Assembly (NCBI GenBank): GCA_029953675.1
Contig: JAMWBK010000007.1
Span: 1 to 64,000 of the forward strand
DNA from: Rhodosorus marinus CCMP1338
Lineage: Eukaryota > Plantae > Rhodophyta
DNA length: 64,000 nt
Reading direction: 5' to 3'
Positions 1 through 53,892 of this stretch are shown piece by piece (positions within the stretch are counted from its first letter, which is position 1; each line of letters begins with the position of its first letter). The notes under the pieces are model-generated. The model saw only the letters and a program-made list of their open reading frames with translations. It was not told where the DNA came from and did not search any database. Made by a program: the position numbers and the translations under genes.

Positions 1-470
1 CGTAACCCCAGACCTTCTAACGTATTACCCCAGACTAACGTAACCCCAGACTAACGTAACCCCAGACTAACGTAACCCCAGACTAACGTAACCCCAGACT
101 AACGTAACCCCAGACTAACGTAACCCCAGACTAACGTAACCCCAGACTAACGTAACCCCAGACTAACGTAACCCCAGACTAACGTAACCCCAGACTAACG
201 TAACCCCAGACTAACGTAACCCCAGACTAACGTAACCCCAGACTAACGTAACCCCAGACTAACGTAACCCCAGACTAACGTAACCCCAGACTAACGTAAC
301 CCCAGACTAACGTAACCCCAGACTAACGTAACCCCAGACTAACGTAACCCCAGACTAACGTAACCCCAGACTAACGTAACCCCAGACTAACGTAACCCCA
401 GACTAACGTAACCCCAGACTAACGTAACCCCAGACTAACGTAACCCCAGACTAACGTAACCCCAGACTAA
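1..470 (-). repeat. Terminal telomeric array, 16-nt unit (G-strand TTACGTTAGTCTGGGG), ~29 copies
   Basis: Perfect tandem CCCCAGACTAACGTAA from ~27 to 470 at the very start of the window; C-rich on +, as expected for a left chromosome end; first ~30 nt are degenerate. Confidence 0.93.
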
Positions 471-508
471 GCCGATTGCTATCTAGGGAATCACTCACAA
501 CAACCCCG

Positions 509-3500
509 CTACCGGGGTCTCATGCTACGTTCAAAAGAAAAAACAGGAACCAGTGGGTTCTCCAACTGGTCCGCACGTAGAGCGCCAAGCGCAATCGCCG
601 CGTTGCCCTGCCATAGGATCCTGTTTAACTGGGATCGTGCATCCCTCAGCTCCTCATCTCGATGCAACAAGTGTTTACAACTGTCCCGCAAAAAGTCTTG
701 CGTCAACCTCCCGCTCCGCCCAAAGGTCTCTATCGCGATCGGGATGAACTTCTCCTCGGGCTTTTCCACACTCATCGCCTCTTTATAGTGCGCGAGCTTG
801 TAGTTCTCCGCCAGTTTCGCTGCATACCCGTTTTCTGCACTGCCACGCCTTATGTACTTTTCCTGTAGCGGTGAAATCACCGTCACATCGATCGCGTACT
901 TTTGAAAGGTCTTTGGATGGGTCGCCACGATATCTGGTCGCAGCTGGTAATTCTCAAAATACCTCTGCGGTTCTTGCTGTATGTCAAGAAAATTCCATCG
1001 GTTGAGCCATCTCCCTAGCTCCGTACAGAGCTCGTCGTGCCGTCTCTGCCATAGTCCCGTCGATGTTGGACAGTGTTGAAATCGTTGCACCCCATTTGGG
1101 CCATGTTTCCTACGGCAACTGGTGCACTGCTCCGTTGTCCGCAACCCCGGAATCGGCAGCCCCAGCAGTTGTCGAACATTTACCTGCAATTCCTGTGAGT
1201 CCAGCTTTCTCGGCTCTAGCAACGGTAGTTCCCGCAGCCATACCCCCGAACCCGAGCCGGCCGCCGATCGGATTCTTGCACGGTGTTCATGCGAAACGCC
1301 CTCGTTGCCGACCAAACGTTGGAACGCGCGATGGTGTGCCTCCCTAGAGAGGGTTTGTTGTATTGAACCATGGTTCCAATCGCGAGGGGAGTCCGCTACT
1401 TCAGGTGCGGCTTCGTCTCTCAATTCGGGCAGCTTGGCCAGTCTCCGGATCCGCGGCGGCGTGTCTGGGCACAGTCTCCGCTCTATAGCACGACTAGACG
1501 CGCGGATTTGCTCACCGATCGTCTCCGTTGACACCTGCAGTCGGCCTAGGTGGCTGATGTGTATGTCGCCACCTTGCCTGACCTGTCGCTCCACCTCCGT
1601 TATATAGGGCCACTGACCCGCATGGTCTCTCAGGGTCTGCGCCCAGGCCGAGAAGAACGCAATCGGCTGTATTCTTGCACGGGTCGCGAACCCCAATCCG
1701 CCCCATCGGCAGGGCAACGAAATCTGCTCGTTGACCGGGTGTATCAGCTCATCCTCGACCAAGGCCGTCGTGCAGAGGCCACCAAACAAGACCTCTAAGT
1801 GGTATCGGCTCATGCTGTCCGCTTCCCTGGCCAGAGCTCGTCCAAACGGGTAGGCAAGGCATCGCAAGGTGTAATCCAACCTCGTTTCTGCGCAATACCT
1901 GTAAAGCGCAAGCTGGATAGGCAGTTCCTCGGTTGGCAGGCTCGAAATCTCCTTGAACAGCTTCTCGTGTTTGTTCTGCAGCCGTCTACACTCGTGCTCG
2001 ATGTACTGCCGAGTGCCGATGGGGATGGAGTGGATTGTGAGGCCTTCCCTAGTCACTTGCACGCCGGGAATCGCACGGTTCACCAAGCGTGTAGTGGTGA
2101 GGGATCGACCATAAAGGCTGCATTTGCTGAGCTGCAGGCGGGCTCCAAGGCACGGTAGCAGGGTCTGTCCCCATTGGAGAGCCTCCTTCAATATAGGCAA
2201 TGCGCCGACCAGAGTGATGTCGTCATGGATGGCGACGATCGTGACTCCCTGAAACTTGTTGCTGAGTGCCTTGAGAAAAGGGGCCAGGGAGAGCGCATGT
2301 AGCACCGGACCTAAAGGGTCGCCTTGTTGTACTCCGGTTTCTGCTTGCAGCGTCAGTCTGTCCTTGTGCAGGTGGTTGTCTTCTTGCGTCGTCCGCCATC
2401 CACAAAGCGTCGGTGTTTCCCCATCGCCTCCATATCCGAGCCTATACACCGCTGTGAGCTCAGGGAAGTGCTGGGCCACCAGTTTCTTGGCAAGTCGCCT
2501 ATCAATGCGGTTAAAGGCGTTCTCGAGGTCCAGTCGAAGTGCAACCGAGTCTGGTTCACATGACAGGTGGGCCTGGATGGCGTGCAGTGACCGTTCACAG
2601 CCACCGCTGACCCCGATTCCCAGCTGCAACGGCACCAACAGCTCGCGGACCCGGTCCATCACCGCTCGCAGCCCCCACTGAGTTGCCACTTTGCGTAGGA
2701 CCTCCGGCACGCCTATTGGGCGGATCCCTGCCTTGGCCTGGGAGTTACCCCCCTGTGCTGGCTTCGAGAAAGGCAGAAGTCTACTGCTACGCAAGGCTCG
2801 TAGCAGAAGGGGTGAGAATCGCCCGGGCGCGGTGGCGAGTTGGCGCAAGACCCGAATCAGTGCTACCTGAGTCTGTTGGTTCGCCCCTTGCAAATGTTCC
2901 GCGCGCATTCCACTCGGTCCAGGGCTCGTCCCTTGAGGTAGTCGTGCCACGATTGAGAGGAGGCTTTCGTCGGCAGCCATTTTTGGATCCCACCGCCTCT
3001 TCAGTGTGTCGTTGTCCGTCGTGAGTAGGCCTTGGAGGGCTTCCACAATCTCCACCGGTGAATCCACACTGGCGGGGCTCGGAAAGAGCTGTTGTAGTTG
3101 CCGCCAGGTAGCCGCTGTGAAAGGCGCCATTTCGGTGGCCTCGAGTCTTCTTGCAGCATCCGAGAGGCGGCCGAGTCGTGCTAGTTTAAGTGCTTGTTTG
3201 CGGCGGCCATCGACTCGTCGACGAACGTCTTCGGCACCGTGTGATGTAGGTGGGGGTTTCATTGATGCGGCTTTCTCCTCAAGGGCCGTCCAGACCCGCT
3301 GGAACTCTCCTTCTAGTACATGTGCGACCTGTACCCCTGTGTCAAGGGTGGAGTGGCCCAGGACCAGACCCGGAAGGCCGACGAGAAGCAGGCTCGCTAA
3401 TGGAGGTGCTGTCGCGTCCAGAGAAAGCTCGAGGGCAGCCCGAAGAAGCCGGCTCCATGTAGAAACGTGTGCTCGGGGCACGAAGCGTCGTGTGGGCACC

Positions 3501-3646
3501 GGGCAATGTGTGATGCGCGTCCAATGCCTCCCCTCCTCCGTGATCTCAGCTACGAAAGCGTTCCAGCGGCAAATCCAGGCCTCCCGGTCAGAGAAGAACA
3601 GAGGCTCTTCTCGTGGGCGTTTACGTCCCCTGCGTCTGGACGGCAT
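509..3646 (-). CDS. Family A ORF2: reverse transcriptase + RLE endonuclease, 1045 aa, intact
   Basis: RT motifs PGPSG, RPIG, LDLENAFN, GVQQGDPLGP, IHDD; CxxC knuckle; RHD; RPDIVA-IDVT-K-PIAIETFG RLE motifs. Confidence 0.93.
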   Translation of the reverse strand: MPSRRRGRKRPREEPLFFSDREAWICRWNAFVAEITEEGRHWTRITHCPVPTRRFVPRAHVSTWSRLLRAALELSLDATAPPLASLLLVGLPGLVLGHSTLDTGVQVAHVLEGEFQRVWTALEEKAASMKPPPTSHGAEDVRRRVDGRRKQALKLARLGRLSDAARRLEATEMAPFTAATWRQLQQLFPSPASVDSPVEIVEALQGLLTTDNDTLKRRWDPKMAADESLLSIVARLPQGTSPGPSGMRAEHLQGANQQTQVALIRVLRQLATAPGRFSPLLLRALRSSRLLPFSKPAQGGNSQAKAGIRPIGVPEVLRKVATQWGLRAVMDRVRELLVPLQLGIGVSGGCERSLHAIQAHLSCEPDSVALRLDLENAFNRIDRRLAKKLVAQHFPELTAVYRLGYGGDGETPTLCGWRTTQEDNHLHKDRLTLQAETGVQQGDPLGPVLHALSLAPFLKALSNKFQGVTIVAIHDDITLVGALPILKEALQWGQTLLPCLGARLQLSKCSLYGRSLTTTRLVNRAIPGVQVTREGLTIHSIPIGTRQYIEHECRRLQNKHEKLFKEISSLPTEELPIQLALYRYCAETRLDYTLRCLAYPFGRALAREADSMSRYHLEVLFGGLCTTALVEDELIHPVNEQISLPCRWGGLGFATRARIQPIAFFSAWAQTLRDHAGQWPYITEVERQVRQGGDIHISHLGRLQVSTETIGEQIRASSRAIERRLCPDTPPRIRRLAKLPELRDEAAPEVADSPRDWNHGSIQQTLSREAHHRAFQRLVGNEGVSHEHRARIRSAAGSGSGVWLRELPLLEPRKLDSQELQVNVRQLLGLPIPGLRTTEQCTSCRRKHGPNGVQRFQHCPTSTGLWQRRHDELCTELGRWLNRWNFLDIQQEPQRYFENYQLRPDIVATHPKTFQKYAIDVTVISPLQEKYIRRGSAENGYAAKLAENYKLAHYKEAMSVEKPEEKFIPIAIETFGRSGRLTQDFLRDSCKHLLHRDEELRDARSQLNRILWQGNAAIALGALRADQLENPLVPVFSFERSMRPR

Positions 3647-5228
3647 TATGATTGCTCGTTGTCCTGCGCTTCCTGCTGAACCGACGGGTTTGTATTGGCT
3701 GCAGTTTCAGGTTGTAGTCCATTCTCGCTCGGTGTGGGGTCGAGGGGAGCTGGTGTCATTTCTGCATCCGTGCTAGATCCGTTGGCAGACCGGCGCGAGC
3801 GCTTAAGTTGAGGAGGTTCCGGCAAGTTGCACGAGAGTTCCGCATGGGGATTGTCCTCTTCTTCCACATCCTGCGGTACTTGGGATGTTCCACCGGAGTC
3901 ACCCTGAGTGGCAACAGTCCCACAGGCTGCCTGTGCATCGTCCGGAGACGACGAGGCTTCAGCGGCTGCGTTTGGTGCGGCTGCAGTCGTTAGGGGTTCC
4001 GCGCTCTCCCTGGATACCGCAGGTTGCTGTTGAAGGGCTTGTAACTTTTCAAGCCGTTGGTCCAGCATCTCGTGCACTCGGGCGAGAGTTGTAAACGAGA
4101 GATGTCGACGGCTCAGCCGCGCGCGGATGCGTATGATCTGCTCGATCGCTCGTCTCAGCGTTTGAGCCCTGACATCTCCGCCGGCGAGTCGTTGCCGCTC
4201 GTTGAACCCCAGCAGGTTATCCGCCTCTAAACCGTGCCCGGTGTACAGGCTCACCTGTCGATCGGGGTGTCGCATGGTAAAGGATCCGAAAATCCCAGTC
4301 CGGAACACCCCCGGCTGATTGCGCTTTGGAGAAGAGGAATTGCATCAGGGTGGCACACGAGGCTCACGTGTGAAGAGATAAAGTCCAAATGCGCCACATA
4401 CGAGCCGGGAATGCCCAACGCCCGGCAGAGGACCGTAGTGAAGTCAGAAGCAGCCACCTCATCCTGTCGTGGGGGACGGATATTTCGGAGGGTAACAAGC
4501 ACTGGCGTGGTCTCAGGGCCCCAGCTGGCCCCTCCCACTGTGGCGTGTAACTGCTTCAGGGCGGCATGTTGCGTCTGCGGCCCAGGCCTTCGCATGGTGC
4601 GGATGGGTGTCTCTACACCGTTCTCTGGTACTTCTACCGCCGAAACCGCCGCGTAGGTGGGTCTGGGGGTGTCATTCCCAAGGGCCGGGAAAGCCGTCTC
4701 AAACCGGACACCCGCAGGGACACCTGTCCCGACCGGAACTTGATTGAAGCCCGTTCCGGCCGCAAGTTGATTGACCACCGCCGTCGGCCGGTGATGCGCC
4801 GAAGCTCCCGAGGGATTCGAAGTCTGTGCAGAAGCTTGCCACATGTGGGGCTTCTGTGCAAGTTCCGTGAGGCGGCTGGTGACATTATGTATCTCTGTGG
4901 TACTGTTAATTCGCGAGTAGAGATTGAAGACTGCTTTGTAGAAGTTCGCGATGTCCTGCTCCCCAATTCCGAGGGCGTGATAGCACTGATCGTAGCTGCG
5001 AAGTTGGTGGAGGAACGTGTTAGCGGGAGAGGATGACGTAGAAGGCTCTGTCCGACTCCCCTCCTGGCACGGTTCTTCTGGGCGTAAAGTAGTCGCTTGT
5101 AGTCCATCATGTGACCCATGCCCGTCCTCTCGTTCAGCAATTGGAGAGGCAGGCAGCATTCCGCTCATTGCACCGGTATTCTTCGAATTCCCCTCCCCAA
5201 ACGAAGGGGAAGTGCCAGTGTTTGGCAT
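3646..5228 (-). CDS. Family A ORF1 (~525 aa if joined), split by a 1-nt frameshift at the C5 run 4308-4312
   Basis: ORFs 4251-5228 and 3646-4308 join into one protein colinear with the family D homologue (49804-50454: SAIARG-VFHSRVFGSF vs SAISRG-VFRTGIFGSF). Confidence 0.75.
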
Positions 5229-5280
5229 ATTTTACCCCAGGCGAACCAAACCTACAAACTTAATTTCGAACCTTATCCAA

Positions 5281-5330
5281 TAACCCCAGATAACCCCAGA
5301 CACCCCAGACTAACCCCAGACTAACGTAAC
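5281..5330 (-). repeat. Degenerate telomeric repeats between two family A copies
   Basis: taaccccaga-taaccccaga-caccccagac-taaccccagactaacgtaac. Confidence 0.9.
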
Positions 5331-5486
5331 CGTGAGCTTTATTGGGCAGTCGCCTAATGCGACGTAACACTAAGCCGATTGCTATCTAGGGAATCACTCA
5401 CAACAACCCCGCTACCGGGGTCTCATGCTACGTTCAAAAGAAAAAACAGGAACCAGTGGGTTCTCCAACTGGTCCGCACGTAGAGC
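5331..5486 (-). mobile_element. Family A 5'-truncated copy (complete 3' UTR + end of ORF2)
   Basis: Matches 471-590 and carries the extra ~45 nt of 3' UTR that runs into the telomere repeat. Confidence 0.9.
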
Positions 5487-5496
5487 CCAGCTAAGG

Positions 5497-6148
5497 GTAA
5501 CCCCAGACTAACGTAACCGTAAGCTTTACTGGGCAGCTGCCTACTGCAGCGCAACACTACGTCTAATCCTATCTAGGGAAAAACTTACTGGAACCCCGCT
5601 ACCGGGGTCTCATGCTACGTTCAAAAGAAAAAACAGGTACCAGCGGATTCTCCAGCTGGTCCACGCGCAAAGCGCCTAATGCTATCTCTGCGTTACCTCG
5701 CCATAGTTGCCGGTTTATCTGGGATCTCACGTCTCTCAGCTCCTCACTCCTGTGCAGTAAGTGCTTGCAGCTGTCCCGGAGGAACTCCTGTGCCATTTGC
5801 CCCGTACTACCCCAGACTAACGTAACCCCAGCTCTCTGCAGATTTCGTCATGCCTACGTTGCCACAGTCCAGTTGATGTTGGGCAGTGATGAAACCGTTG
5901 TACCCCAGTCCTTCCGTGTTTACTCCGGCAACTAGTGCACTTCTCGGTGGTCCGCAATCCCGGAATTGGCAGACCCAGCAGTTGTCGAACGTTTACCTGC
6001 ATCTCAACCGCACTCAATTTTTTCGGTGTCAGCGTTGGTATTTCACGTAGCCAGACTCCCGACCCGGATCCCGCGGCAGACCGTCTTCGAGCTCGGTTTT
6101 CAGGGGAGATTCGTGGGTTGGTGACCAGCTTTTGGAATGCGCAATGCT
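5497..6148 (-). mobile_element. Family A subfamily b fragments, interrupted by a telomere unit at 5809-5831
   Basis: Encodes RQLLGLPIPGLRTTEKCTSC...RHDE and AQEFLRDSCKHLL...MRPR; diverged 3' UTR ending in the telomere repeat. Confidence 0.85.
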
Positions 6149-6156
6149 AAGACATT

Positions 6157-6207
6157 AAAAGTTCGTCAGGGGAAATCCGGGAATTGAACCCGGGACCTCT
6201 CGCACCC
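6157..6207 (-). pseudogene. tRNA-Pro 3' half (anticodon loop to discriminator) plus 3' trailer with a T4 run
   Basis: Minus strand GGG-TGCGAG-AGGTC-CCGGG-TTCAATT-CCCGG-ATTTCCC-C then TGACGAAC-TTTT; matches the eukaryotic tRNA-Pro 3' half; 5' half not seen. Confidence 0.85.
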
Positions 6208-6322
6208 CAGACTAACGTAACCCCAGACTAACGTCACCCCAGACTAACGTAACCGTGAGCTTTATTGGGCAGTCGCCTAATGCGACGTAACACTAAGCCG
6301 ATTTACCCCAGACTAACGTAAA
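6204..6322 (-). mobile_element. Three telomere units + 48-nt family A 3' tip + one telomere unit
   Basis: 6255-6302 matches 5331-5378; flanked by CCCCAGACTAACGTAA units. Confidence 0.85.
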
Positions 6323-7380
6323 CCAGCCCCCGAATAAGGCAGCTCCTCAACCCCACGTACCTGACTGCTGCCCCTGCAGCAAATTCCCCCCCTGACCAGT
6401 CTGCGGTGAAGCAAGGTTCCTTACAACAGACCCTCTCAAGAGAGGCACACCTTACTGCTTTCACCCGACTGGTCACGGATCCCTTACTCGACCCGGAACA
6501 TCGTGCCCGAATCCGTTCCGCTGCAGGAGCAGGTTCAGGCGTCTGGCTAAGAGATTTGCCACAATTCGGACCCCGAAAATTGAGTGGGAGAGGCATGCAC
6601 CTGAATATCCGACAATTGCTGGGTCTCCCGATTCCGGGACTGCGGACGACGGAGAGGTGTACTACGTGCAATAGTACACACCGTACGAACGGTGTACAAA
6701 GATTCCATCATTGTCAGACCTCGACTGGGCTCTGGCAACGGCGACATGATGAGCTCTGCACTGAGCTGGCGCGTTGGCTTAACAGATGGCAGTTCAGAGA
6801 TGTTCAGCAAGAACCTACAGACTACTTCACGAACTCGAATCTACGACCTGACTTGGTAGCTATACACCCTCGAACCTGGCAACGATTTGCGATCGATGTG
6901 ACGGTGGTGTCACCCCTACAGGCGAGACACCTAGCCAACAGCAAAGACAACAATGGTTATGCAGCAAAACAGGCGGAGCGTTGGAAACTTGCACACTACA
7001 AGGAGGCGATGGCGACAGAGCATCCAGATGACAAACTGATTCCGATTGCGATAGAAACCTTCGGCAGAACAGGGCAGATGACCCAAGACTTTCTCCGTGA
7101 GGGCTGTGGGCACATGCTAACTAAGCAGTACGAGTTGAGCAACGCGCGGGCTCAACTAAACAGAACACTCTGGGCAGGGAACGCAGAGCTCGCGTTAGGG
7201 GCTTTGCGCGTGGATCAGTCGGACCAGCCACTGATCCCTTATTTTTCTTTTTTATCGTAGCTAGAGACCCCGGGAGTCGGGGTTAAACACACACATTTTC
7301 CCTAGATCTTGATAGAATTAGTGTTGCGCTGCATTAGGCAGTTGCCGAGTAAAGTTTACAGTTACGTTAGTCTGGGGTTA
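6323..7380 (+). mobile_element. Family A subfamily c, 5'-truncated, inverted relative to the array
   Basis: ORF 6406-7260 encodes knuckle + RLE; 3' UTR ends GTTACGTTAGTCTGGGGTTA. Confidence 0.88.
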
Positions 7381-7446
7381 CCCCAGAAGAACCCCAGACT
7401 AACGTAACCGTAAGCTTTACTGGGCAGCTGCCTACTGCAGCGCAAT
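7381..7446 (-). mobile_element. Telomere unit + family A-b 3' tip, tail-to-tail with the previous copy
   Basis: 7391-7445 matches 5500-5552. Confidence 0.85.
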
Positions 7447-7645
7447 GAGTCCGTCGCAAATCTATTAGCGAAGTGCTTGTATGCTCCTTTCGACTCCCTT
7501 TGCGCCTTGGGTGAATTCCCCCGCAAGAGATTCCTATATTAGAAGCATGATTATCTCTCTGGGCTCTGTGCTTTGGCAGGGATTTATCCAACAGGACTTA
7601 CGTCATAACAGATATCCCCGTGGCAGAAGCTGAAGCCGTGATCCC

Positions 7646-8587
7646 ACCCCAGACTAACGTAACCCCAGACTTCCGTGCCGCATACCCGGTCTCCCAAGAC
7701 GCTTTGTGGAGGTGTGTTCTTTGCAAAGGCGAGGTCACCTTCACATCGATCACGTAGAGCTTGCCTGTTCGTGGGTGTCGGGCTAGAATGTCAGGCCGAA
7801 GCCGACTGCCTTGGTAGTGTCCGGTCGGTTCTATTGTCGCTTCTAGTCGCCATTGTCTCAGCACTGTCGCCAGGGCGTCCCTGACCATGTTATGCCGAAT
7901 TGTCCAACTCCCGGTAGAGCTGGTGCAGTGGTGAAGGCGTTGAATGCCTGCAGCGTCGTGTGGTTGGGAACATATCGTACACGTACTAAGTATTCGTACA
8001 CCCGGCAGGGGCAATCCCAACAGTTGTCGAAGGCTCAGGTTCAGTTCTCCGCTACTTAGGCCGCGTCCGTGTTTCCTTGGCAAGTCTCGCAGCCAAGTAC
8101 CCCCTCCTGATCCCTTGCAGGAGCGTATTCGCGCACGTGCCGTCTCGCTGATCTCCGCGTTCTCCACCATTTCCTCGAATGCCCGTCGGTGACTCCAGTT
8201 GGAGAGGAGTTTTTGGGTTGAACCGATCAAGGGCCTGTCGGGTGGTGTGTGCGGGTTCTCTGCTTGTTCTTGGCTCTCCAACGATTGCCATTCTGTTAGG
8301 CGGAGTATGGGGGCCGGTGTTCCTCGTGCCAGGCAGCGTTTTGAGTGGAGGCTCGCTTCGATTAGTTGTGCTCCAAGTTGATCCGTCGAGTGGAGCAGGG
8401 GTCGAATGTGATGGTGCTCGGTCAGGTTCGTCGATGTGCAGGCATCGAGTAGCGCTCCTAGGTGGCTAGATCCAGTCCAATTGAGCTTCAGAGTCTGTCG
8501 CCAACTGCTGAAGAAGGCGAGGGGTTGTATTCGTGTTCTCATCGCTAGGCCTGCGCCACCCCATCGACCCCAGACTAACGTAACCCC
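7646..8587 (-). mobile_element. Family D internal fragment (thumb to RLE) bracketed by telomere units (7646-7670, 8567-8587)
   Basis: RTRIQPLAFFS...CTICSQPHDAAGIQRLHHC...RPDILARHPRTGKLYVIDVKV; telomere units translate as VTLVWG at both ends. Confidence 0.85.
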
Positions 8588-8595
8588 TACCATTT

Positions 8596-9023
8596 CACCT
8601 GTGACGACAGCCGCCGTACCACATACGTTGATCTTGCTGTTCCTAACCCTCAAGCTAGTCGTTATCTCCCGGCTGCGGGGGAGCGCCGTGGATCTGCCGC
8701 CGCCAGCATGAGACGCCGCAAAGAGATCAAATACGCGGGGGCTTTGTCTTCCCCTGGTGTTCGTGCTTCGGCACTAGCACATCGCTTGGTACCCCTGATC
8801 ATTGAGTGCTTTGGGTTCATGGACTCTGTTGGTTCTCGCTGGCTTCGGGAGTTGTTCCGCGAACGCCCTGACCGTCTTCAATCGTTGTTTACCCGTTTAA
8901 GTTTCCTGCTGTGGCGCATGAATGCCGCTTTGATGTTGGAGGCGCGAGTACTTCGCCGCGCTTAGTCTTTTTTTCCCCTCGGGGTTTTTTTTTCAGCCTC
9001 CGATTAAACCATTCGTTCGTTCG
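8596..9023 (+). mobile_element. Family B 5'-truncated copy
   Basis: Ends LEARVLRRA* then the T7-CCCCTCGGGG-T9-CAGCCTCCGATTAAACCA(TTCG)n tail shared by all B copies. Confidence 0.9.
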
Positions 9024-9185
9024 ACTAGGGAGATGTCGTCGTGTACCGCGGCGAGGGTAAGTGTTGGAAACCTTGGCCGCAGACCACGCAGGAATGGGGC
9101 TAGAGCAAGGGCATGTAGCACTGGCCCTAAAGGGTCTCCTTGTTGGGCTCCAGTGCGTGCCTCCAGACTAACGGAAGCGGACAAG
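9024..9185 (-). mobile_element. Family D-like RT fragment
   Basis: LEARTGAQQGDPLGPVLHALALAPFLRGL...AAVHDDIS. Confidence 0.8.
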
Positions 9186-9609
9186 CACCTCAGGCCAACA
9201 TGAATATTCAGAATAACTGGAGCCGTCACTGTCAATCCTAATAGGGTGACAAGAAACACGGCACTCAACCTCATCATGATCAATCCGCTGTCTCTGTTCG
9301 AAACAGATGACTCCTGCCGCCGGTCTGCAAAACCTTTTACTTTCCTTCAAAATTCAAGTTTCAGCGCTCGTCAGAGCTTCCGCTTATACCAATAAAGGAC
9401 TTGCAAAGAACGCCCAGGTCATCTGGATCAGATCCCAGCTCCACGCAAAGACCGCGGACTTTGTGCGCGTGCATTTCGGCAGGATGAAAATGTCCAATGG
9501 AATGTTGGTGTAGAGACAGCAAAACCTTCATTGCCCAATTTTTATGTCCTGATTAGCATCGCCCCTCCAAGAGGCACAAAGATTGCGCGCGTGGACATGC
9601 GTCAGCCTC

Positions 9610-10774: not shown

Positions 10775-12100
10775 ATAATCATGTTCGGACAATGTTCCCT
10801 ATAGAAAGTAGTCTTCTACCCCGCGCTGGGGTCTCCTTAGCCCAGTCCCTCCTGTTTTCCTTGCCTATCTCTAGCGCTACATTCGGTAGTTGGGGAACAA
10901 GTTGGAGTAAACGGAAAACTGTAAACCCGCAGTCGAAAGATCGTTCAACTCCTCAGGTTTGTTGTGTTTTGCATGTTCGCCATTGCCTTTTTTTTTTTTT
11001 TTTACCTGGTTAAGTGGTGAAGTCTGGGAGTTTTCAGTGGTCGACACCCGGGTGGGACAGCGGGGGAGGGCACCTTGGGCATGTCTAATCGCCACCCTCT
11101 TCCCGTTTTCTTCCCGTCCCCAGTCAGCAAATTCTCGTCTAGTCTCCTGTACTGTATCACAAGCTTCGAATACCGGCGAGAACTTCTTCGCCGGTCAGAT
11201 TCCATAGCCATTACACACTCATCCAACCTGATTCACTTTTTCTTCTTCTCTTGGAAGCCTCAACTCGGGATGACTGATTCCTAGTAAAGCCCGGAAAGAT
11301 AATCATGTTCGGACAAGGACCCTATAGAAAGTAGACTCCTAGTTTTCAGCGGTCGACACCCGGGTGGGATAGCGGGGGAGGGGTGTCAGGACCTTGGGCA
11401 TGTCTAATCGCCACCCTCTTCCCGTTTTCTTCCCGTCCCCAGTCAGCAAATTCTCGTCTAGTCTCCTGTACTGTATCACAAGCTTCGAATACCGGCGAGA
11501 ACTTCTTCGCCGGTCAGATTCCATAGCCATTACACATTCATCCAACCTGATTCACTTTTTCTTCTTCTCTTGGAAGCCTCAACTCGGGATGACTGATTCC
11601 TAGTAAAGCCCGGAAAGATAATCATGTTCGGACAAGGACCCTATAGAAAGTAGACTCCTACCCCGCCACGTTCTTTCACTTCCAAAATAAGATTCGTATC
11701 CGGTGCAATGTTGTAGTGAGCGACTAATGTAACCCCGCGCTGGGGTCTCCTTAGCTCAGTCCCTCCTGTTTTCCTTGCCTATCTCTAGCGCTACATTCGG
11801 TATTTGGGGAACAAGTTGGAGGAAACGGAAAACTGTAAACCCGCAGTCCAAAGATCGTTGCAACTCCTCAGGCGTTGTGTTTTGCATGCTCACCATTGCC
11901 TTTTTTTTTTTTTTTTTACCTGGTTAAGTGGAAAAGTCTGGGAGTTTTCAGCGGTCGACACCCGGGTGGGATAGCGGGGGAGGGGTGTCAGGACCTTGGA
12001 CATGTCTAATCGCCACCCTCTTCCCGTTTTCTTCCCGTCCCCAGTAAGCAAATTATCGTCTAGTCTCCCGTACTGTATCACCAGGTTCGAGCTTCGCCTC
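10775..12100 (+). repeat. Cluster of family E 3' ends interleaved with a ~300-nt unit repeated three times
   Basis: GATAATCATGTTCGGAC...CTATAGAAAGTAG at ~10775, 11298, 11617; GTCGACACCCGGGTGGGA...CCGGCGAGAAC unit at ~11040, 11350 and, partially, 11955. Confidence 0.75.
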
Positions 12101-32115: not shown

Positions 32116-32454
32116 GGTTAGCCTGGGGAAGGGAAACGCGCTAGAACGCCAGTCCTCAAAAACTACCCGGAAGAGTGAAAAAAGCAGGGAGCTCGCAAGG
32201 ATCCCGCAGGGACTCGGATATCCTGCTCCCTCACTTCGGAGAAAGCGTCATTGGGATGAGAATCAGGGTGGGAAGGAGAAGAATTGTCCCCCGCCCCTGG
32301 CCTCAAAAGAGGACGCTTGGGCGGAGGGAGACGCAGAGAGGAGAGGGACGCATAAGCAGCCGCCAAAGAGCCGGCAACGCGACGCCGAACACCCGAGGCC
32401 TCGGGGGGGCTCGGCTTGATAGCGAGCGGATCCACCGAATCCCCGCCAGCCGAA

Positions 32455-37924: not shown

Positions 37925-38026
37925 CCCCGGTAGCGGGGTTCCAGTAAGTTTTTCCCTAGATAGGATTAGACGTAGTGTTGCGCTGCAGTAGGCAGCTGCC
38001 CATTAAAGCTTACGGTTACGTTAGTC
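37925..38026 (+). mobile_element. Family A-b 3' UTR ending in GGTTACGTTAGTC
   Basis: Near-identical to the reverse complement of 5510-5605. Confidence 0.88.
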
Positions 38027-46069: not shown

Positions 46070-46162
46070 GTTACGTTAGTCTGAAGTTGAGAGCGACCAT
46101 AGAGTAGTGGTATTTCGCTGTGGTAGGTAGCTGCCTAATAAAGACTACGGGGTTACGTTAGT
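46070..46162 (+). mobile_element. Family D 3' tip flanked by GTTACGTTAGT on both sides
   Basis: Similar to 53825-53892; telomere 11-mer at 46070-46080 and 46152-46162. Confidence 0.8.
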
Positions 46163-49325: not shown

Positions 49326-52300
49326 GGTTACCAATGGTGATACTCCAGCGGATACAATGGATACTGCGTCAACGCTTTCGGAAGAGAACTTTCTACTGGA
49401 CTTCATGCAGAAGTTCTCGAAGTACACCGCCCTTTACGAAGATGTTGGAGTGGCAGTCACAGAGATGCAGGTTTTTTTCGTTAATGTGGACCGGTTGTAC
49501 AGCAGGGCAAGCACAACCGCCGACCTGAAGGGGATCAATGATCATCTGGAGCGTTTGGGTGCAAACCCCATGCTGTGGAACCCCTCGAAAGTGCCGCACG
49601 GAGGTCAGCCCCGCCATGGACAGCACCAGAAGATACCCTATCAACTCGGGAGTCAATCCACCGATCAGTCAACAGAGGAGTCTGGGGCGGGACACCGAGA
49701 GATGCCCACCATGGGACAACAGCAACTGGACAGCAGAGTTCGGGACAGTCTGGGGTGGGACAGCAGGATCTAGCATTCCCCCCCTTGGGACATACCCCTC
49801 CCAGTGGCACGTACGCACAGCGTGCGGCCAAGGCAGCCGGGATGCGTCAGCAGACAGCCCTCAGACAACTGCACCACGGTTGGAGGAAGCAGATGGGGCC
49901 CCGATACACTCCCAGTGCTCGCGACGTTGCGAAACGTACGCCCGCCGCGCAACGAATTGGTGGCGCTCTCGGATTACAAACAAGTCCTGTGCACAGCGCT
50001 GGGTATTCTGGTACCCCTAATTGCACATATCGACTTTGTCGCCACCCACGCACTACTGGTATGTCATCCGGACGCGATACCCTTGATCACGAGCGCCATT
50101 GCGAGGGGAGTGTTCCATTCACGTGTGTTTGGATCCTTCGCGAGACGCCGCCAAGATCACCAGGTAACAATTCACACCGGAGTCGAGCCAGAAGCGCGGA
50201 ACCTGATCGAGTACAATGAGAGGCTCGCACTACAGACGCATGAAGTTAGCCAACGCACACTTGAGCGAGCCATTGAACAGATGGAGAGAGTTAAGCGCCT
50301 GATTTCCCTGCAGTCGATGCCGTTCACTACTCCCCCCCTTCGGCTTCCATCCATGCGCATCTGGATGCTCGCATGGAGTATCTGCGCTCGCGCCTTGAGT
50401 CGCAGGAACCCGCAGCCCACCGCATGGCCTCCACTGTCACGTAAGAGGGAGTGAGATCCCGCTCCAGACAGGAGCTGATAACGAAAGCGCACCGATTCCC
50501 GAAGTCACACCGGGCAATGCACAAGCGAATTACCGCCAGATATTGGGGCCTCTGAAACTTCGGGTACCGGCAGCTCCGAGGCCCAGCCGACCACTATGGA
50601 AGTGGTCCATGATGAAGATACCCCCGCCACGGACGAGACACGATCTCTGAAGAACCGAGACAGCAGGACTCTGCGCCCGAAAACGCCCAATCATGAGCCA
50701 GGTTCGAGAAAGCGGCTGCGAGACACCGCGTTGATCACCACGGATCCGGAGGCTTGGGAACAACGGCTTCACATGTTCCTAGTTGCACAGACGGACGACA
50801 GCAGCCGCTGGTGGATGGTCACACATAACTCCGTACGGACCCGTGAACACGTACCTAATGCACAGGCCAAACATTGGAACCTACTACTCCACCGTGCACT
50901 AGGTCTGGCATTGAACACTGCAGCGGCTCTGCTCTTACGCCTCTTCATCATGGCATTACTTGCGTGGCGCTAGGAATCTGTGATCTTCAGATCGGGGAAC
51001 AAATGGGGCATCTCTTGGAGGGTGAATTCTCAGTTGTATGGAAGGCGTTAAATGTGGCGGCCACCAGCCAGCCCTCTCCTAGTGAGAGGAGAGCTGATAA
51101 CCAGAGAGAAACATGGAAAAATAGACAGGTTGTGAAGCTGGCTCATTCTGGGCGCCTCTCTGCATCTTCACAGCGCCTTGAAGCCACGGAGCTCGCACCG
51201 CAGACGTCGTCCACGTGGAACGCTCTGCGCGAGCTATTTCCAGACGCCTCGATGGAACCGTTACATCCGGATGTTGCGAAAGAATGAACCGAATTCTCGA
51301 CGAAGCTAGAGATCACCCTCCCCGCAAATGGAATCCGTCTGACGCGAACGACGAATCACTCCTCTCACTGATCAATAGACACCCGCCAAAAACGGGTCCC
51401 GGGCCAAGTGGCCTTCGCGCCGAGCATCTACAGTCTGTGACTTCAACGAATAGGCCTCTGTTGGTACGGTTCCTGCGCTGCGCCTCGTGAAGAATCCTGA
51501 AATATTTCCACGTACGCTGCGGCAAGCCCTGAGTAGCAGCCGACTGCTGCCCTTCATAAAGCCCGACAAGGAAGACGCCTCTGAAATCGCAGTCCCTCGA
51601 CGAGTTCGTGTTCGCCCGATCGCGGTTCCAGAAGTTTTACGAAAGTTGGCAGCCCAGTGGGTGCTTCGCGGGGTTTCAAGTAGACTGAGCACGTTTCTTA
51701 CTCCACAGCAACTAGGAATCTCCGTTCGTAGTGGATGTGAACAAGCCCTACACGCCGTTCAAGCCCACTTACACTACGAACCTCGACACGCACTGCTGAA
51801 ACTCGACTTGGAGAACGCGTTCAACCGGATCGACAGGAGAGTGGGGGCATTGGTAGCTGATGCCTGCTTCCCGGAGCTGATGCCAATACTCATCCTCGCG
51901 TATGAGGAGTCAGAGGAAAGTGCCCCCCTGCAGTTTGCCTGGGCGAACTGCAACGAAACTGAGCACAAAATCACCGATCGCCTGTTCCTGGAGGCCAAGA
52001 CGGGAGTGCAACTAGGGGACCCCCCGGGACCGGTGCTACTCGCACTCGCCCTAGCACCTTTTTTGCGGGGTCTGGGAAGAAAGTTCCCCGAGTCGACGCT
52101 CGCGGCAGTGCACGACGACATTTCGTTAGTAGGTGAGCTACAAACCTGTAAGACCGCGCTGTTATGGAGCCAGGAGGCCTTGTCCGGCATCGGAGCAAAG
52201 CTGCAACGTTCGAAATGTGTTCTATACGCACCACGGTTGGACACTCCCAGGGTGGTTAACCTCGACATCCCTGGGGTTGAGGTGACACGAGCCGGGACTA

Positions 52301-53892
52301 CATTGTACTCGCTACCTATTGGCACTCGCAAGTACGCGGAAGAAAGATGTCGGGCCATTCAAACGAGACATGCGAAATGGTAAAGGCCATCCAGCGTCTC
52401 CCTGATGCAGAACTCCAAGTCAAGCTTGCTCTCTTTCGGTCCTGCGCAGGATCGAGACTCGACTACCACACACGTGGGCTGGCGTACCCACTTGGACGTA
52501 CGGTAGCGCGAGAGGCCGATGCCATCACGCTCTCGGAGCTGGAAGGACTGTGCGGAGGACTACGACAACATCAAGACATCAGCGAACGAGAGGCTAAAGC
52601 AGTTGAACAACAAATACGACTACCCTGTCGATGGGGAGGACTTGAATTTGCCACTCGAACTCGTATTCAACCTGTTGCCTTCCACTCAGGGTGGAAAAAT
52701 AGCGTGCAAGGGACCGTCACGCCGTCTAAATTCCTAGAAAGGCTTCACCGGGAGTGTGTTGCGGTGGCGCAAGGGGAATCGGTTTCAGGGGTTCGACTAG
52801 CATGGACAACTGACGGACTTGCTAGGCAACTGGTGGAGGCAAGTCGCGGGATTGGACGACGGTTGTCAACGACCACAAGTGCGCGGATCAAGAGGATGGC
52901 GGAATGGCAGCTGAGTGCGGAGTCAGCCCAAGGCACAGCTGAGGACGCAGAAGGAAACCAGAGGTTTGACGGTCCAATACAAAAAAAACTCTCGAGAGTG
53001 TCACCGGCAAGCCTTTGAGGTACTTACCGGGGATCCAACGCTGGAAGATATTGACCGGGCGCGTATCCGATCGGCAGCCGGAACAGGATGTGGGGTATGG
53101 ATGCGAGACTGTCCTAGTACAGGGCCGAGGCAGTTGAACAGAGGTGAGATGATCTAGAGCATCCGGATGCTGTTGGGGCTACCACTAACAGGACTAGCTC
53201 GGTCCTACACGTGCACAATTTGTGGACAAGCTCACGATGTACGAGGAATTCAACGTCTACATCCCTGCCGAACGTCGTCAGGTATGCGCAAAAAGCGACA
53301 TGATGAACTAAAAATGGAGCTGGGCCGATGGATGCGCGAATTTTACGGAACTACAAGTGGAGCCGCAAGGGTTCTTTTCCGGGTCAGGTATTCGACCAGA
53401 TATTGTAGCACGGCATCCGACGAGCGGGCATGTGTACGTGGTGGACGTAATGGTGAAGTCGCCGCTTCAACGTCATCAACTGAGACAAACGAGCTGGAGA
53501 ATCGGATATGCAGCGGCGAAAGGGGAGCAAAGCAAAGTGGCACACTACCAGGAGTTAATACGCAGGGAGGTGATACTCGTACCATTCATTGTTGAGACGT
53601 TTGGACGGCTGGGACAGGTAGGACTAGAATTTCTGCGAAAGGCCACTGCTCATCTTCATGATCGTGAAACACACCTAACATCGGTGAGGGGTCAATTAAA
53701 TCGGATTCTGTGGCAGCGTAATGCTGCGCTATTAGAGCATGCGATCGAGAAAGATCGCGCGGATAGAACAATATTTCCATTGAGTAGAACTTAGATGAGA
53801 CCCCTGGACAGGGAGTCCAAGTGAGTTTAGAGCGAGCATATAGTGTGGTATTGCGCTGCGGTAGGTAGCTGCCGAATAAAGGCTACGGGGTT
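49326..53892 (+). mobile_element. Family D near-full-length degenerate element (ORF1 + ORF2, many frameshifts)
   Basis: ORF1 pieces homologous to family A ORF1; RT with VHDD; GIQRLHPC; RPDIV...VDVMV...FIVETFG; 3' UTR with the A-type hairpin ending CTACGGGGTT. Confidence 0.85.

What the first reader, a model, noticed from the sequence alone, without database searches (positions are those of the whole stretch)
1..8587. Telomere-targeted RLE retrotransposon array at a chromosome end with a 16-nt telomere
Seen: at least eight family A/D pieces form a patchwork, almost every junction carries 1-3 units of the terminal repeat (5281, 5497, 5809, 6204, 6304, 7361/7391, 7646, 8567), and every intact A-type 3' UTR reads directly into GGTTACGTTAGTC(TGGGG). 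Established: telomere-repeat-specific non-LTR elements are known (SART/TRAS in Bombyx, APE-type; MoTeR in Magnaporthe, RLE-type), but they target short 5-6 nt repeats. Inference: this is a two-ORF RLE lineage adapted to a long 16-nt repeat. It would nick the C-strand and prime on an RNA 3' end complementary to it (3' end toward the chromosome end, SART-like orientation), coexisting with telomerase and repeatedly rebuilding the chromosome end.
Basis: partly seen in the sequence, partly recalled or inferred. Interest (0 to 1): 0.88.

Follow-up and report, generated by a model that had tools for sequence, protein, structure and literature searches.

The report
Telomere-targeting retrotransposon array, red alga
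One end of a chromosome of the red alga Rhodosorus marinus carries a 16-base telomere repeat. Just inside it lies a stack of jumping-gene copies joined at one fixed spot in that repeat, making this apparently the first red-algal example of a known type of telomere-specific retrotransposon.

Summary
Window 1-470 is 28 perfect copies of a 16-nt repeat, with the G strand TTACGTTAGTCTGGGG running toward position 1. The window is the first 64 kb of Rhodosorus marinus contig JAMWBK010000007.1. Positions 471-9176 hold nine pieces of one non-LTR retrotransposon lineage, and nearly every junction carries 1-3 telomere units.

The full-length copy (471-5280, minus strand) has two ORFs. ORF2 has an RT domain and a C-terminal CCHC/PD-(D/E)XK endonuclease whose predicted fold matches only R2 proteins.

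All 21 intact 3' ends found in about 198 kb of this genome read into telomere sequence in one register. Fifteen carry at least 11 nt of it. The telomere tracts end, at the next piece's 5' end, within GGGG-T-T-A-C.

This fits a nick in the C strand (CGTAAC^CCCAG), target-primed reverse transcription and a 1-5 bp duplication. One interior single-unit site rebuilds cleanly.

Four pieces, including the terminal full-length copy, lack their 3' ends. They are capped by repeats at variable registers, as expected for breakage followed by telomerase healing.

The lineage is dense near contig ends and absent from three interior loci. It is not strictly terminal.

This is a new member of a known kind (SART/TRAS, MoTeR/FoTeR). 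Cleavage and activity are untested.

The parts
1..470 (-). Terminal telomere array: 28 perfect units. The G strand TTACGTTAGTCTGGGG is on the minus strand and runs 5'->3' toward position 1, which is the contig start.
   Evidence: window equals contig positions 1-64000
471..5280 (-). Full-length element A1 (4.8 kb). It has no LTRs. Its 3' UTR lacks the last 37 nt and joins the telomere at a TTAGT microhomology, a healing-type junction.
509..3646 (-). ORF2, 1045 aa, intact: RT domain (aa 306-512, active site IHDD) plus a C-terminal CCHC/RLE domain (aa 841-921).
3646..5228 (-). ORF1, about 545 aa, with no recognisable domain. It is split by a 1-nt frameshift in a G5 run near 4305. The ORF1 stop and ORF2 start overlap as TAATG at 3646.
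5281..5331 (-). Telomere tract at the 5' end of A1: one full unit plus three short variant units (GTCTGGGGT, GTCTGGGGTTA and TCTGGGGTTA).
5332..5486 (-). 5'-truncated A copy (155 nt), identical to the matching part of A1, with an intact 3' end.
5487..5518 (-). Telomere tract: one unit plus a degenerate unit.
5519..5808 (-). 5'-truncated A' copy (about 290 nt) with an intact 3' end. Copies 97-98% identical, with other truncation points, occur in L006 and L007.
5809..5831 (-). Telomere tract capping a 3'-truncated piece (healing-type start CTGGGG).
5832..6203 (-). ORF2 piece (aa 772-878 equivalent), truncated at both ends. Its 5' side is fused to a tRNA-gene-like 3' fragment with a T4 trailer (6147-6203).
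6204..6254 (-). Telomere tract, 3.2 units.
6255..6303 (-). 49-nt A-type 3' end fragment with an intact 3' end.
6304..6321 (-). Telomere tract, one unit.
6322..7359 (+). 5'-truncated A'' copy (ORF2 aa 714-end plus 3' UTR) in the reverse orientation, with its 3' end pointing toward the centromere.
7360..7408 (.). Tail-to-tail junction: a G-strand unit on the + strand (7360-7381) meets C-strand units (7382-7408). It forms an imperfect 122-nt inverted repeat with the flanking UTRs.
7409..7645 (-). 37-nt A' 3' end joined to 200 nt of unique, unidentified sequence. This may be a non-autonomous passenger.
7646..7671 (-). Telomere tract capping the 3'-truncated D piece.
7672..8566 (-). D-type ORF2 piece (aa 647-944 equivalent, 41% identical to A1), truncated at both ends. 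The RLE motif is present.
8567..8587 (-). Telomere tract capping a broken B-family copy. This is the oldest healing event recorded here.
8588..9020 (+). 5'-truncated B-family element. B is a related RLE family without telomere tails, also found at interior loci.
9023..9176 (-). Old A-lineage RT fragment with a degenerate telomere unit (9161-9176) at its 5' side.
37925..38026 (+). 102-nt A' 3' end plus a 13-nt telomere tail, at an interior site directly after a full-length B copy.
46070..46162 (+). E-type 3' end fragment flanked on both sides by single telomere-like units.
49330..53892 (+). Degenerate full-length E-type copy at an interior site. Only GGGGTT follows its 3' end.

Best explanation
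The stretch from 471 to about 9.2 kb is a subtelomeric stack of copies from one lineage of RLE-type (R2-like endonuclease), two-ORF, non-LTR retrotransposons. The lineage has at least five subfamilies (A, A', A'', D, E). It integrates into the 16-nt telomere repeat of Rhodosorus marinus.

Proposed mechanism; these steps are inferred, not shown:
1. ORF2p binds the conserved last 45 nt or so of the 3' UTR, which include a stem-loop and an invariant TAAAG.
2. Its C-terminal endonuclease nicks the C strand at 5'-CGTAAC^CCCAG-3'.
3. The freed 3' end pairs with the last few bases of the RNA (...GGUUAC in A types, ...GGGGUU in E types) and primes reverse transcription.
4. The G strand is broken 1-5 nt further on. 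This leaves a 1-5 bp target duplication and, usually, a 5'-truncated copy whose 3' end points to the chromosome end.

Between insertions the end broke or eroded into elements and was recapped by a repeat-adding activity, presumably telomerase. That left the 1-3-unit tracts and the 3'-truncated pieces.

What is shown: the anatomy, the registers, the endonuclease fold and the distribution.
For: - Domains: RVT_1. The RLE motif is complete in A1, A'' and D. HMMER aligns the CCHC/RLE region to R2. The AF2 model's top seven Foldseek hits are all R2 proteins.
- No LTRs or terminal inverted repeats.
- 3' junctions: 21 intact 3' ends in the window, L006, L007 and L009 all continue in telomere register (N)GTTACG or GGGGTT. 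Fifteen have tails of 11-23 nt.
- 5' junctions: tract ends fall at GGGG|, GGGGT|, GGGGTT|, GGGGTTA| or GGGGTTAC| in 22 of 34 tracts (P 6e-5). In the terminal array 12 of 12 fall at the last four of these positions (P 6e-8).
- Empty-site reconstruction at L008 2321-2354: TCTGGGGTTA|GTAAAGCTTAC|GGTTACGTTAGTC. This is an 11-nt insert in one interstitial unit with a GGTTA duplication.
- Independent insertions: copies 97-99% identical sit in three contigs with different 5' truncation points and different flanks.
- Control families: B and C, related RLE elements, end in ...CCATTCGTTCG with no telomere tail. They occur at interior loci where the A lineage is absent. A-lineage coding density is 80% in the terminal 9.3 kb, 16-41% in three subtelomeric stretches and 0% in three interior loci.
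- 3' UTR: the last 45 nt are conserved across subfamilies, with a 5-bp stem in which 3 of 5 pairs show compensatory changes.
- Healing: A1 lacks 37 nt of its UTR and joins the array at TTAGT. The tracts at 5809, 7646 and 8567 start at variable registers on truncated elements.
- Transcription: MMETSP Rhodosorus marinus transcripts encode ORF2 pieces 67-80% identical to A1.
Against: - No biochemical data. The nick position is read from junctions in which element and target bases overlap, so it could be off by a few bases.
- Six of 21 intact 3' ends carry only 5-6 telomere-like bases. These are mostly E type, and two lie 755 kb from a contig end.
- Dense A-lineage sequence lies 150-173 kb from a contig-5 end (L006). 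Copies 12-54 kb into the window have mixed orientation. Location is therefore not strictly terminal.
- Two 3' ends (window 7359, L007 444) are oriented as if primed from a G-strand end.
- No DNA-binding domain was identified in the N-terminus. The model has pLDDT 64 and no fold match.
- Sampling is small and biased: about 198 kb, with the extra loci reached through paralogues of a subtelomeric gene.
- Only one intact ORF2 was seen, and its ORF1 has a frameshift.
- Neither a telomerase gene nor a telomerase RNA was examined.
Confidence: 0.75

Rival explanations
1. The array was built mainly by recombination: break-induced replication, unequal exchange or segmental duplication between chromosome ends, seeded by interstitial telomere tracts. 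It would not then reflect serial retrotransposition into this particular end. The elements may still be telomere-targeted elsewhere.
For: MoTeR arrays in Magnaporthe expand and contract this way, and their interstitial tracts break and are healed (PMC7367193). Segments 97-99% identical are shared between this end and L006/L007. Mixed orientations and internalised arrays occur 12-173 kb from contig ends.
Against: The shared segments differ in 5' truncation point and in both flanks. Neighbouring pieces belong to different subfamilies. The fixed 5' and 3' registers and the single-unit TSD site need an integration mechanism, not only recombination.
Confidence: 0.2
2. Insertion does not depend on the endonuclease. 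Element RNAs are reverse-transcribed onto eroded or uncapped chromosome ends, as with HeT-A/TART or L1 at dysfunctional telomeres, and telomerase adds units between events. The telomere association would then reflect free DNA ends rather than sequence-specific cleavage.
For: Two tail-to-tail junctions (window 7359/7381 and L007 436/444) have the orientation expected for priming from a G-strand 3' end. Healing-type junctions show that the ends are often exposed.
Against: 8 of 9 pieces, and most copies elsewhere, have the opposite orientation. That orientation needs a C-strand 3' OH, which means an internal nick. The registers are fixed at both junctions. An interior single-unit target carries a TSD. 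The RLE catalytic residues are conserved across subfamilies.
Confidence: 0.08
3. The telomere-like bases are simply the elements' own terminal sequence. Insertion is not sequence-specific, and copies pile up in subtelomeres because insertions are tolerated there.
For: Six intact 3' ends have only 5-6 telomere-like bases followed by unrelated DNA. Three interior tails stop at exactly 13 nt (38014, 11734, L008 2342). This would fit an RNA that ends 13 nt into a repeat.
Against: 5'-truncated pieces cannot carry their own upstream unit, yet they are preceded by tracts ending in one register. Tracts of 2-3 full units occur between pieces. B/C families tolerate the same regions without any telomere units.
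Confidence: 0.07
4. The patchwork is an assembly artefact of chimeric or collapsed Nanopore reads at a repetitive chromosome end.
For: The assembly is Nanopore-based with Illumina polishing. ORF1 has a homopolymer frameshift. The first 27 nt of the contig are irregular.
Against: The same junction grammar recurs in three other contigs. The junctions are precise to the base and phase-consistent.
Confidence: 0.03

Closest known systems
MoTeR1/MoTeR2 (Magnaporthe oryzae) and FoTeRs (Fusarium oxysporum): telomere-targeted RLE non-LTR retrotransposons of the CRE group
   Same: - RT plus a C-terminal CCHC/RHD...E...R(P/A)D...D/E endonuclease.
- Embedded in telomere repeats.
- Arrays separated by short interstitial telomere tracts.
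- Variant telomere-like repeats at full-length 5' ends.
- Evidence of breakage and healing at tracts.
(PMC12857005; PMC7367193.)
   Different: - MoTeR and FoTeR always have the 5' end nearest the chromosome end. Here the 3' end faces the end in 8 of 9 pieces.
- They have one ORF; here there are two.
- Their target is a 6-nt TTAGGG repeat; here it is a 16-nt unit.
- Their hosts are fungi; here it is a red alga.
- Sequence relationship to the CRE group was not tested. The nearest named relatives found are Pyropia and Closterium proteins at 30-34% identity.
SART1/TRAS1 (Bombyx mori), telomeric-repeat-specific R1-clade elements
   Same: - Insertion at a fixed position in the telomere repeat.
- SART-like polarity, with the 3' end followed by the G strand toward the chromosome end.
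- The RNA 3' end overlaps the target repeat.
- They coexist with telomerase-type repeats.
(Established knowledge; listed in PMC10088271.)
   Different: - SART and TRAS use an N-terminal APE endonuclease and end in poly(A).
- Here the endonuclease is a C-terminal RLE, there is no A tail, and no APE domain was found by Pfam.
R2 (28S rDNA-specific RLE element)
   Same: It is the closest solved structure, matching the C-terminal linker, zinc knuckle and RLE (Foldseek E 1.6e-6, TM 0.68). HMMER aligns both the RT and RLE regions. Both show site-specific TPRT with a structured 3' UTR and no poly(A).
   Different: - R2 has a single ORF with N-terminal zinc-finger and Myb domains, and it targets 28S rDNA.
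- Here there are two ORFs, no ZF or Myb domain was detected, and the target is the telomere repeat.
- Identity is only 12-14%.
GilM/GilT (Giardia) and Zepp (Chlorella), telomere-associated LINE-like elements of protists and algae
   Same: They are telomere-associated non-LTR elements in microbial eukaryotes. GilM and GilT were assigned to the CRE clade by RT (PMC10088271).
   Different: The primary paper was not available here, so their orientation and junction details were not compared. Zepp is poly(A)-tailed and L1-like (from memory).

Membership tests
RLE-type non-LTR retrotransposons (R2/CRE/NeSL/R4/HERO superfamily) | Reverse transcriptase domain of non-LTR type | tested here: met
   Pfam RVT_1 E 1.8e-8, aa 306-512. 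PDB sequence hits are to R2 and LINE-1 ORF2p. The active site is IHDD.
RLE-type non-LTR retrotransposons (R2/CRE/NeSL/R4/HERO superfamily) | C-terminal CCHC motif followed by a PD-(D/E)XK restriction-like endonuclease | tested here: met
   C-X2-C-X13-H-C-X9-RHD-X20-E-X10-RPD-X14-D at aa 841-921. C, RH and D residues are nearly invariant in the alignment. The AF2 model (pLDDT 83) matches only R2 proteins at E<1e-3.
RLE-type non-LTR retrotransposons (R2/CRE/NeSL/R4/HERO superfamily) | No LTRs or TIRs; frequent 5' truncation with a common 3' end | tested here: met
   No terminal repeats in 471-5280. Pieces of 11 nt to 1 kb share the same 3' end.
Telomere-repeat-specific non-LTR retrotransposons (functional class: SART/TRAS, MoTeR/FoTeR, Tx1-1_ACar) | Insertion inside telomeric repeats at a fixed position in the unit | tested here: met
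   21 of 21 3' junctions are in one register. 5' junctions fall within a 5-nt span in 22 of 34 tracts, and within a 4-nt span in 12 of 12 in the terminal array. One site reconstructs with a TSD.
Telomere-repeat-specific non-LTR retrotransposons (functional class: SART/TRAS, MoTeR/FoTeR, Tx1-1_ACar) | Uniform orientation relative to the chromosome end | tested here: met
   8 of 9 pieces in the terminal 9.2 kb have the 3' end distal. All nine tracts in L007 have the polarity of the nearby contig end. There are two reversed exceptions.
Telomere-repeat-specific non-LTR retrotransposons (functional class: SART/TRAS, MoTeR/FoTeR, Tx1-1_ACar) | Confinement to telomeres or subtelomeres genome-wide | tested here: inconclusive
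   Density falls from 80% to 0% between the end and the interior loci. However, only about 198 kb of 31 Mb was seen. L006 lies 150-173 kb from a contig end, and E-type remnants occur 755 kb from an end.
Telomere-repeat-specific non-LTR retrotransposons (functional class: SART/TRAS, MoTeR/FoTeR, Tx1-1_ACar) | Endonuclease cleaves telomeric duplex DNA specifically | not testable with these tools
   This needs purified protein and a (TTACGTTAGTCTGGGG)n substrate.
CRE group (CRE1/2, SLACS, CZAR, MoTeR, FoTeR, Cnl1) | RT/REL phylogeny places the element inside the clade | not tested
   No reference sequences for CRE, NeSL, HERO or R4 were obtainable. The nearest database proteins are unnamed, or from Pyropia and Closterium.
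CRE group (CRE1/2, SLACS, CZAR, MoTeR, FoTeR, Cnl1) | REL motif spacing C-X1-3-C-X7-8-H-X3-4-C-X9-10-RHD/N-X19-33-E-X9-21-R/KPD-X12-14-D/E (as quoted in PMC12857005) | tested here: inconclusive
   The RHD-X20-E-X10-RPD-X14-D part fits. The zinc-knuckle spacing differs (C-X2-C-X13-H-X0-C).
MoTeR/FoTeR family | 5' end of the element faces the chromosome terminus | tested here: not met
   The 3' end faces the terminus in 8 of 9 pieces.
SART/TRAS (R1 clade) | N-terminal APE endonuclease and a poly(A) tail | tested here: not met
   No Exo_endo_phos hit. The 3' ends run straight into telomere sequence without an A tract.
R2 clade | N-terminal zinc-finger/Myb DNA-binding domains and a 28S rDNA target | tested here: not met
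   No Pfam hit in the N-terminal 319 aa. The helical model has no fold match. The target is the telomere repeat.

The most novel reading that the evidence does not exclude
The element may use the telomere in two ways. Its RNA tail overlaps the repeat around the self-complementary ACGT core. It could therefore be primed either from an RLE nick in the C strand (the common orientation) or directly from the natural G-strand 3' end (the two tail-to-tail junctions). On this reading the lineage acts as a retrotransposon back-up that lengthens eroded ends alongside telomerase. The unusually long 16-nt repeat and the element's target specificity would then have co-evolved.
Probability: 0.1. Interest if true: 0.8.

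Novelty: new member of a known kind. Interest (0 to 1): 0.55.

Why it matters
- It would add Rhodophyta to the few lineages with telomere-repeat-specific retrotransposons: insects, two fungi, Giardia, Chlorella and a lizard. It would be another independent origin of telomere targeting by an RLE element. Its polarity is opposite to the fungal MoTeR/FoTeR elements and its target unit is nearly three times longer.
- The junction grammar gives a concrete, testable cleavage site for an endonuclease that reads a long, unique sequence. That is of interest to people who adapt R2-type elements for site-specific insertion.
- It puts on record a 16-nt terminal repeat in a mesophilic red alga. This may explain why standard telomere probes and TRAP primers failed in such algae (PMC3622300).
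- It documents repeated cycles of end breakage, healing and insertion at one chromosome end.
- No paper in the searchable library links Rhodosorus with retrotransposons or prints this repeat.

Tried and rejected
- Literature search for the 16-mer in any rotation found only chance primer hits.
- Exact-sequence look-ups of window ORFs found nothing. The TE ORFs are not in the genome annotation.
- Loci of distant relatives (Pyropia L002, metagenome L003, Logan L004) showed no telomere context. They have too little flank.
- Rfam on 1-9200 gave no family above noise and no HDV-like ribozyme. The only hits were hairpin artefacts of the inverted junction.
- ARAGORN found no tRNA.
- Pfam found nothing for ORF1 or the ORF2 N-terminus.
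- The AF2 model of the N-terminal 300 aa has low confidence (pLDDT 64), and Foldseek gave no match. The DNA-recognition domain remains unidentified.
- Attempts to reach another true contig end failed. L007 stops 7.3 kb short of the contig-6 end, and the look-ups are exhausted.
- JGI contigs L010 and L011, from another R. marinus data set, hold a 3'-truncated copy next to a host gene. They say nothing about the RNA 3' end.
- Cluster names for distant full-length relatives were empty, so no clade assignment was possible.
- The idea that the element's RT makes the terminal array was rejected. The sense RNA carries G-strand sequence and could only template the C strand.
- Internal mispriming as the cause of A1's 3' truncation was rejected. 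Priming at the UTR's internal GUUACG from the canonical nick would simply reproduce the intact sequence. The observed junction at ACTAA would need a different nick site.

Full report
**Origin**

The phosphate-transporter gene at 21233-23167 is annotated on NCBI contig JAMWBK010000007.1 (2,212,799 bp) of assembly GCA_029953675.1. Its record coordinates equal the window coordinates. The assembly belongs to Rhodosorus marinus CCMP1338, a unicellular red alga (Stylonematophyceae). It was built from Nanopore and Illumina data. Its authors report that 12 contigs carry at least one telomere, but they do not state the motif (PMC10250338). The window is therefore the first 64 kb of a chromosome-scale contig.

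**The observation**

TRF reports 28.2 copies of a 16-nt unit at 17-470 with 99% matches. A 16-mer search finds 42 sites against 0.04 expected. The + strand carries CCCCAGACTAACGTAA. The G strand TTACGTTAGTCTGGGG therefore runs 5'->3' toward position 1, as expected for a left chromosome end.

Single or few units recur at 5314, 5501, 5810, 6205-6252, 6306, 7362 (inverted), 7392, 7647 and 8568. A degenerate unit lies at 9161-9176.

**The element**

The minus strand of 471-5280 holds a full-length element, A1.
- ORF2 (509-3646, 1045 aa) has a Pfam RVT_1 domain.
- Its C-terminus carries C-X2-C-X13-H-C-X9-RHD-X20-E-X10-RPD-X14-D. The part from RHD onward fits the restriction-like endonuclease (REL/RLE) motif quoted for CRE, SLACS, MoTeR and FoTeR (PMC12857005). 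The zinc-knuckle spacing differs.
- HMMER aligns both the RT and this region to R2 proteins in the PDB.
- An AlphaFold2 model of the last 286 aa (pLDDT 83, pTM 0.81) has R2 proteins as its top seven Foldseek hits, all with probability 1.0. The first six have E<1e-3. The best is 9dou_A, with E 1.6e-6 and TM 0.68.
- ORF1 (about 545 aa) has no recognisable domain. In A1 it is split by one frameshift in a G5 run near 4305. Related copies are in frame (window 49402-50331; L007 4296-5921, 542 aa). A Nanopore homopolymer error cannot be excluded.
- The ORF1 stop and ORF2 start overlap as TAATG.
- There are no LTRs or inverted termini.

**The patchwork**

From the proximal side to the distal side:
1. 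An old RT fragment (9023-9172) with a degenerate unit.
2. A B-family copy broken at 8588 and capped by 1.3 units.
3. A D-type ORF2 piece (7672-8566) that has lost its 3' part and is capped by 1.6 units.
4. A 237-nt piece (7409-7645): 200 nt of unique sequence plus a 37-nt A' 3' end.
5. An A'' piece (6322-7359) in reverse orientation, joined tail-to-tail.
6. A 49-nt A 3' end (6255-6303), followed by 3.2 units.
7. An internal ORF2 piece (5832-6146) fused at its 5' side to a tRNA-gene-like fragment. It lacks its 3' part and is capped by 1.4 units.
8. A 290-nt A' piece (5519-5808).
9. A 155-nt A piece (5332-5486).
10. The full-length A1 and the terminal array.

**A1's terminal junction**

A1's 3' UTR is identical to the 5332-5486 copy up to ...GGCTTAGT. 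It then runs into CTGGGGTTACG... and so lacks the last 37 nt. The junction sits in a 5-nt TTAGT microhomology. Its register differs from that of all intact 3' junctions. This is what de novo repeat addition to a broken end would give. The same holds for the tracts that cap the pieces at 5832, 7672 and 8588, whose proximal registers all differ.

**Junction grammar**

I searched the window and five other stretches of the same genome (L005-L009, about 112 kb) for the conserved 3' terminus GCC..TAAAG..(T/C)AC.
- All 21 genuine hits are followed by telomere sequence in one register, (N)GTTACG... or GGGGTT.... Tails are 11-23 nt in 15 cases and 5-6 nt in 6.
- Subfamilies differ in the base or bases before GTTACG: G in A and A', A in A'', C in one copy, GGG in E. 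The common target-derived part therefore starts at GTTACG. That places the C-strand nick at 5'-CGTAAC^CCCAG-3'.
- The distal ends of the tracts, which are the 5' junctions of the next piece, fall at GGGG|, GGGGT|, GGGGTT|, GGGGTTA| or GGGGTTAC| in 22 of 34 tracts (binomial P 6e-5).
- In the terminal array, 12 of 12 tracts end at the last four of these positions (P 6e-8).
- Together these imply a 1-5 bp target duplication.

The cleanest case lies 220 kb from a contig end, at L008 2321-2354: TCTGGGGTTA|GTAAAGCTTAC|GGTTACGTTAGTC. Removing the 11-nt insert and one GGTTA restores a single 18-nt telomere unit.

The short tails (GGTTAC, GGGGTT) at non-telomeric sites suggest that the RNA itself ends in about 6 bases that match the target. 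This would let the nicked C strand anneal. That is inference.

**3' UTR**

The last 45 nt or so are conserved across all subfamilies, and TAAAG is invariant. RNAalifold predicts a 5-bp stem-loop (GCTGC-AGTAG-GCAGC) in which 3 of 5 pairs show compensatory changes. The support is modest, but it is consistent with a protein-binding element as in R2.

**Distribution and controls**

Two related RLE families, B and C, are 28-33% identical to A1 in ORF2 and also have two ORFs. They end in ...AAACCATTCGTTCG followed by unrelated sequence.

| Stretch | A-lineage coding | B/C coding |
|---|---|---|
| Terminal 9.3 kb of the window | 80% | 5% |
| Window, 9.3-64 kb from the end | 16.5% | 26% |
| L007, 7-30 kb from the contig-6 end | 25% | 30% |
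| L006, 150-173 kb from the contig-5 start | 41% | 12% |
| L008, about 220 kb from an end | 0.1% (12 bp) | 23% |
| L009, about 755 kb from an end | 0% | 20% |
| L005, about 1 Mb from either end | 0% | 0% |

In L007 all nine tracts have the strand polarity of the nearby contig end.

L006 and L007 repeat the same grammar. This includes a full-length copy whose 5' end is preceded by short variant units (GTCTGGGGTTA)2. [quoted passage not shown]

Copies 97-99% identical occur in three contigs with different truncation points and different flanks. This argues for independent and fairly recent insertions.

MMETSP transcriptomes of R. marinus contain ORF2 pieces 67-80% identical to A1, so the lineage is transcribed in other strains.

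Caveats: the extra loci were reached through paralogues of a subtelomeric gene, so the sample is small and biased. No second true contig end could be reached.

**Exceptions**

- Two 3' ends abut the end of a G-strand tract: window 7359/7381, and L007 436/444 with GGTTACGT|AAACCCCGTAGCC. This is the orientation expected if a G-strand 3' end primed the cDNA. The unit contains a self-complementary ACGT that could allow pairing.
- Some E-type copies lie at ordinary sites (window 53886; L009 7602 and 7837).
- Copies 12-54 kb into the window have mixed orientation. This is consistent with later subtelomeric rearrangement.

**Comparison with known systems**

Known telomere-specific non-LTR elements include SART/TRAS, MoTeR1, GilM/GilT, Zepp and Tx1-1_ACar (PMC10088271), and FoTeRs.
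- The present lineage works like these, by site-specific insertion into telomere repeats.
- Structurally it is an RLE element like MoTeR and FoTeR.
- It has the opposite polarity to them, two ORFs, a 16-nt target and a red-algal host.
- Its nearest database relatives are only 30-34% identical: Pyropia vietnamensis and Closterium proteins, and unnamed metagenome ORFs.
- Clade assignment could not be tested.
- Nothing in the searchable literature links Rhodosorus to retrotransposons or prints this repeat.
- Earlier work failed to detect telomere motifs in mesophilic red algae with standard probes.

**Verdict**

There are three refinements:
- The terminal junction and three others record healing rather than insertion.
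- Targeting is of the repeat sequence, giving enrichment in subtelomeres rather than strict terminal location.
- A role in 'rebuilding' chromosome ends is not shown.

It is a new member of a known kind, of moderate interest.

Noticed in passing
window 1-470, and all interstitial tracts: The telomere repeat is 16 nt (TTACGTTAGTCTGGGG). That is far longer than the usual 5-9 nt and does not appear in the searchable literature. A 2013 survey could not detect telomere motifs in mesophilic red algae with standard probes or TRAP primers.
   Followed up: partly
window 6147-6203 (minus strand): A tRNA-gene-like 3' fragment (T arm and acceptor 3' strand, no CCA, trailer ending in TTTT) is fused to the 5' end of a truncated ORF2 piece. 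It looks like an RT template switch onto a nascent Pol III transcript. ARAGORN and Rfam do not call it.
   Followed up: partly
window 37925-38026; L007 21426-21465: Two full-length B-family copies are each followed directly by a short A'-type 3' end (102 nt and 28 nt) plus a telomere tail. B may hitch-hike on the A' 3' end by template switching, or these may be chimeric transcripts.
   Followed up: no
window 7324-7445; L007 420-450: At two tail-to-tail junctions an element's 3' end abuts the end of a G-strand tract. This is the orientation expected for priming from a G-strand 3' end. The repeat contains a self-complementary ACGT that could support this.
   Followed up: partly
window 5281-5313; L007 4238-4259: Both full-length 5' ends seen are preceded by 2-3 short variant units (9-11 nt, GTCTGGGGTTA and close variants, lacking CGTTA). 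None of the 5'-truncated pieces has them. MoTeR 5' ends carry comparable variant repeats.
   Followed up: partly
window 7446-7645: 200 nt of sequence with no match elsewhere in the held data is attached to a 37-nt A' 3' end and flanked by telomere units on both sides. It may be a non-autonomous passenger mobilised through the shared 3' end.
   Followed up: partly
window 12626-15310 (+): This secreted 891-aa protein gene has no known domain. It belongs to an R. marinus family of at least eight genes. One lies 17 kb from the contig-6 end and others are interior. All nearby host genes in the window (RTX-repeat protein, glycine-rich protein, astacin) carry signal peptides.
   Followed up: partly
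window 32746-32909, within the A3 copy at 32163-35095: A 51-nt x 3.2 in-frame tandem repeat lies inside ORF2 of an interior A-like copy, between the RT and RLE regions.
   Followed up: no
window 34773-35100: The long 'B ORF2' reading frame begins with about 109 codons that are the antisense of the neighbouring A3 copy's ORF2 N-terminus. The mechanical ORF overstates the B protein, and the real B element starts near 35140.
   Followed up: no
window 11029-11660, 41036-41294 and 56575-56766: Other tandem repeats (319 bp x2, 86 bp x3, 15 bp x12.7) lie in the subtelomeric region. They are unrelated to the telomere unit.
   Followed up: no
L002 10720-10776; L004 5390-5432: Two distant relatives of ORF2 are followed by simple repeats. 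The Pyropia copy is followed by (CA)28, and a Logan contig ends in CCTTGTGGGCC repeats. Other members of this RT family may target other repeats.
   Followed up: no
L010 and L011 (JGI sample 3300016967): In another R. marinus-like data set, a 3'-truncated A-like ORF2 end sits next to an NHL-repeat gene on the opposite strand, with no telomere unit. This is a non-telomeric remnant or a chimeric transcript contig.
   Followed up: no
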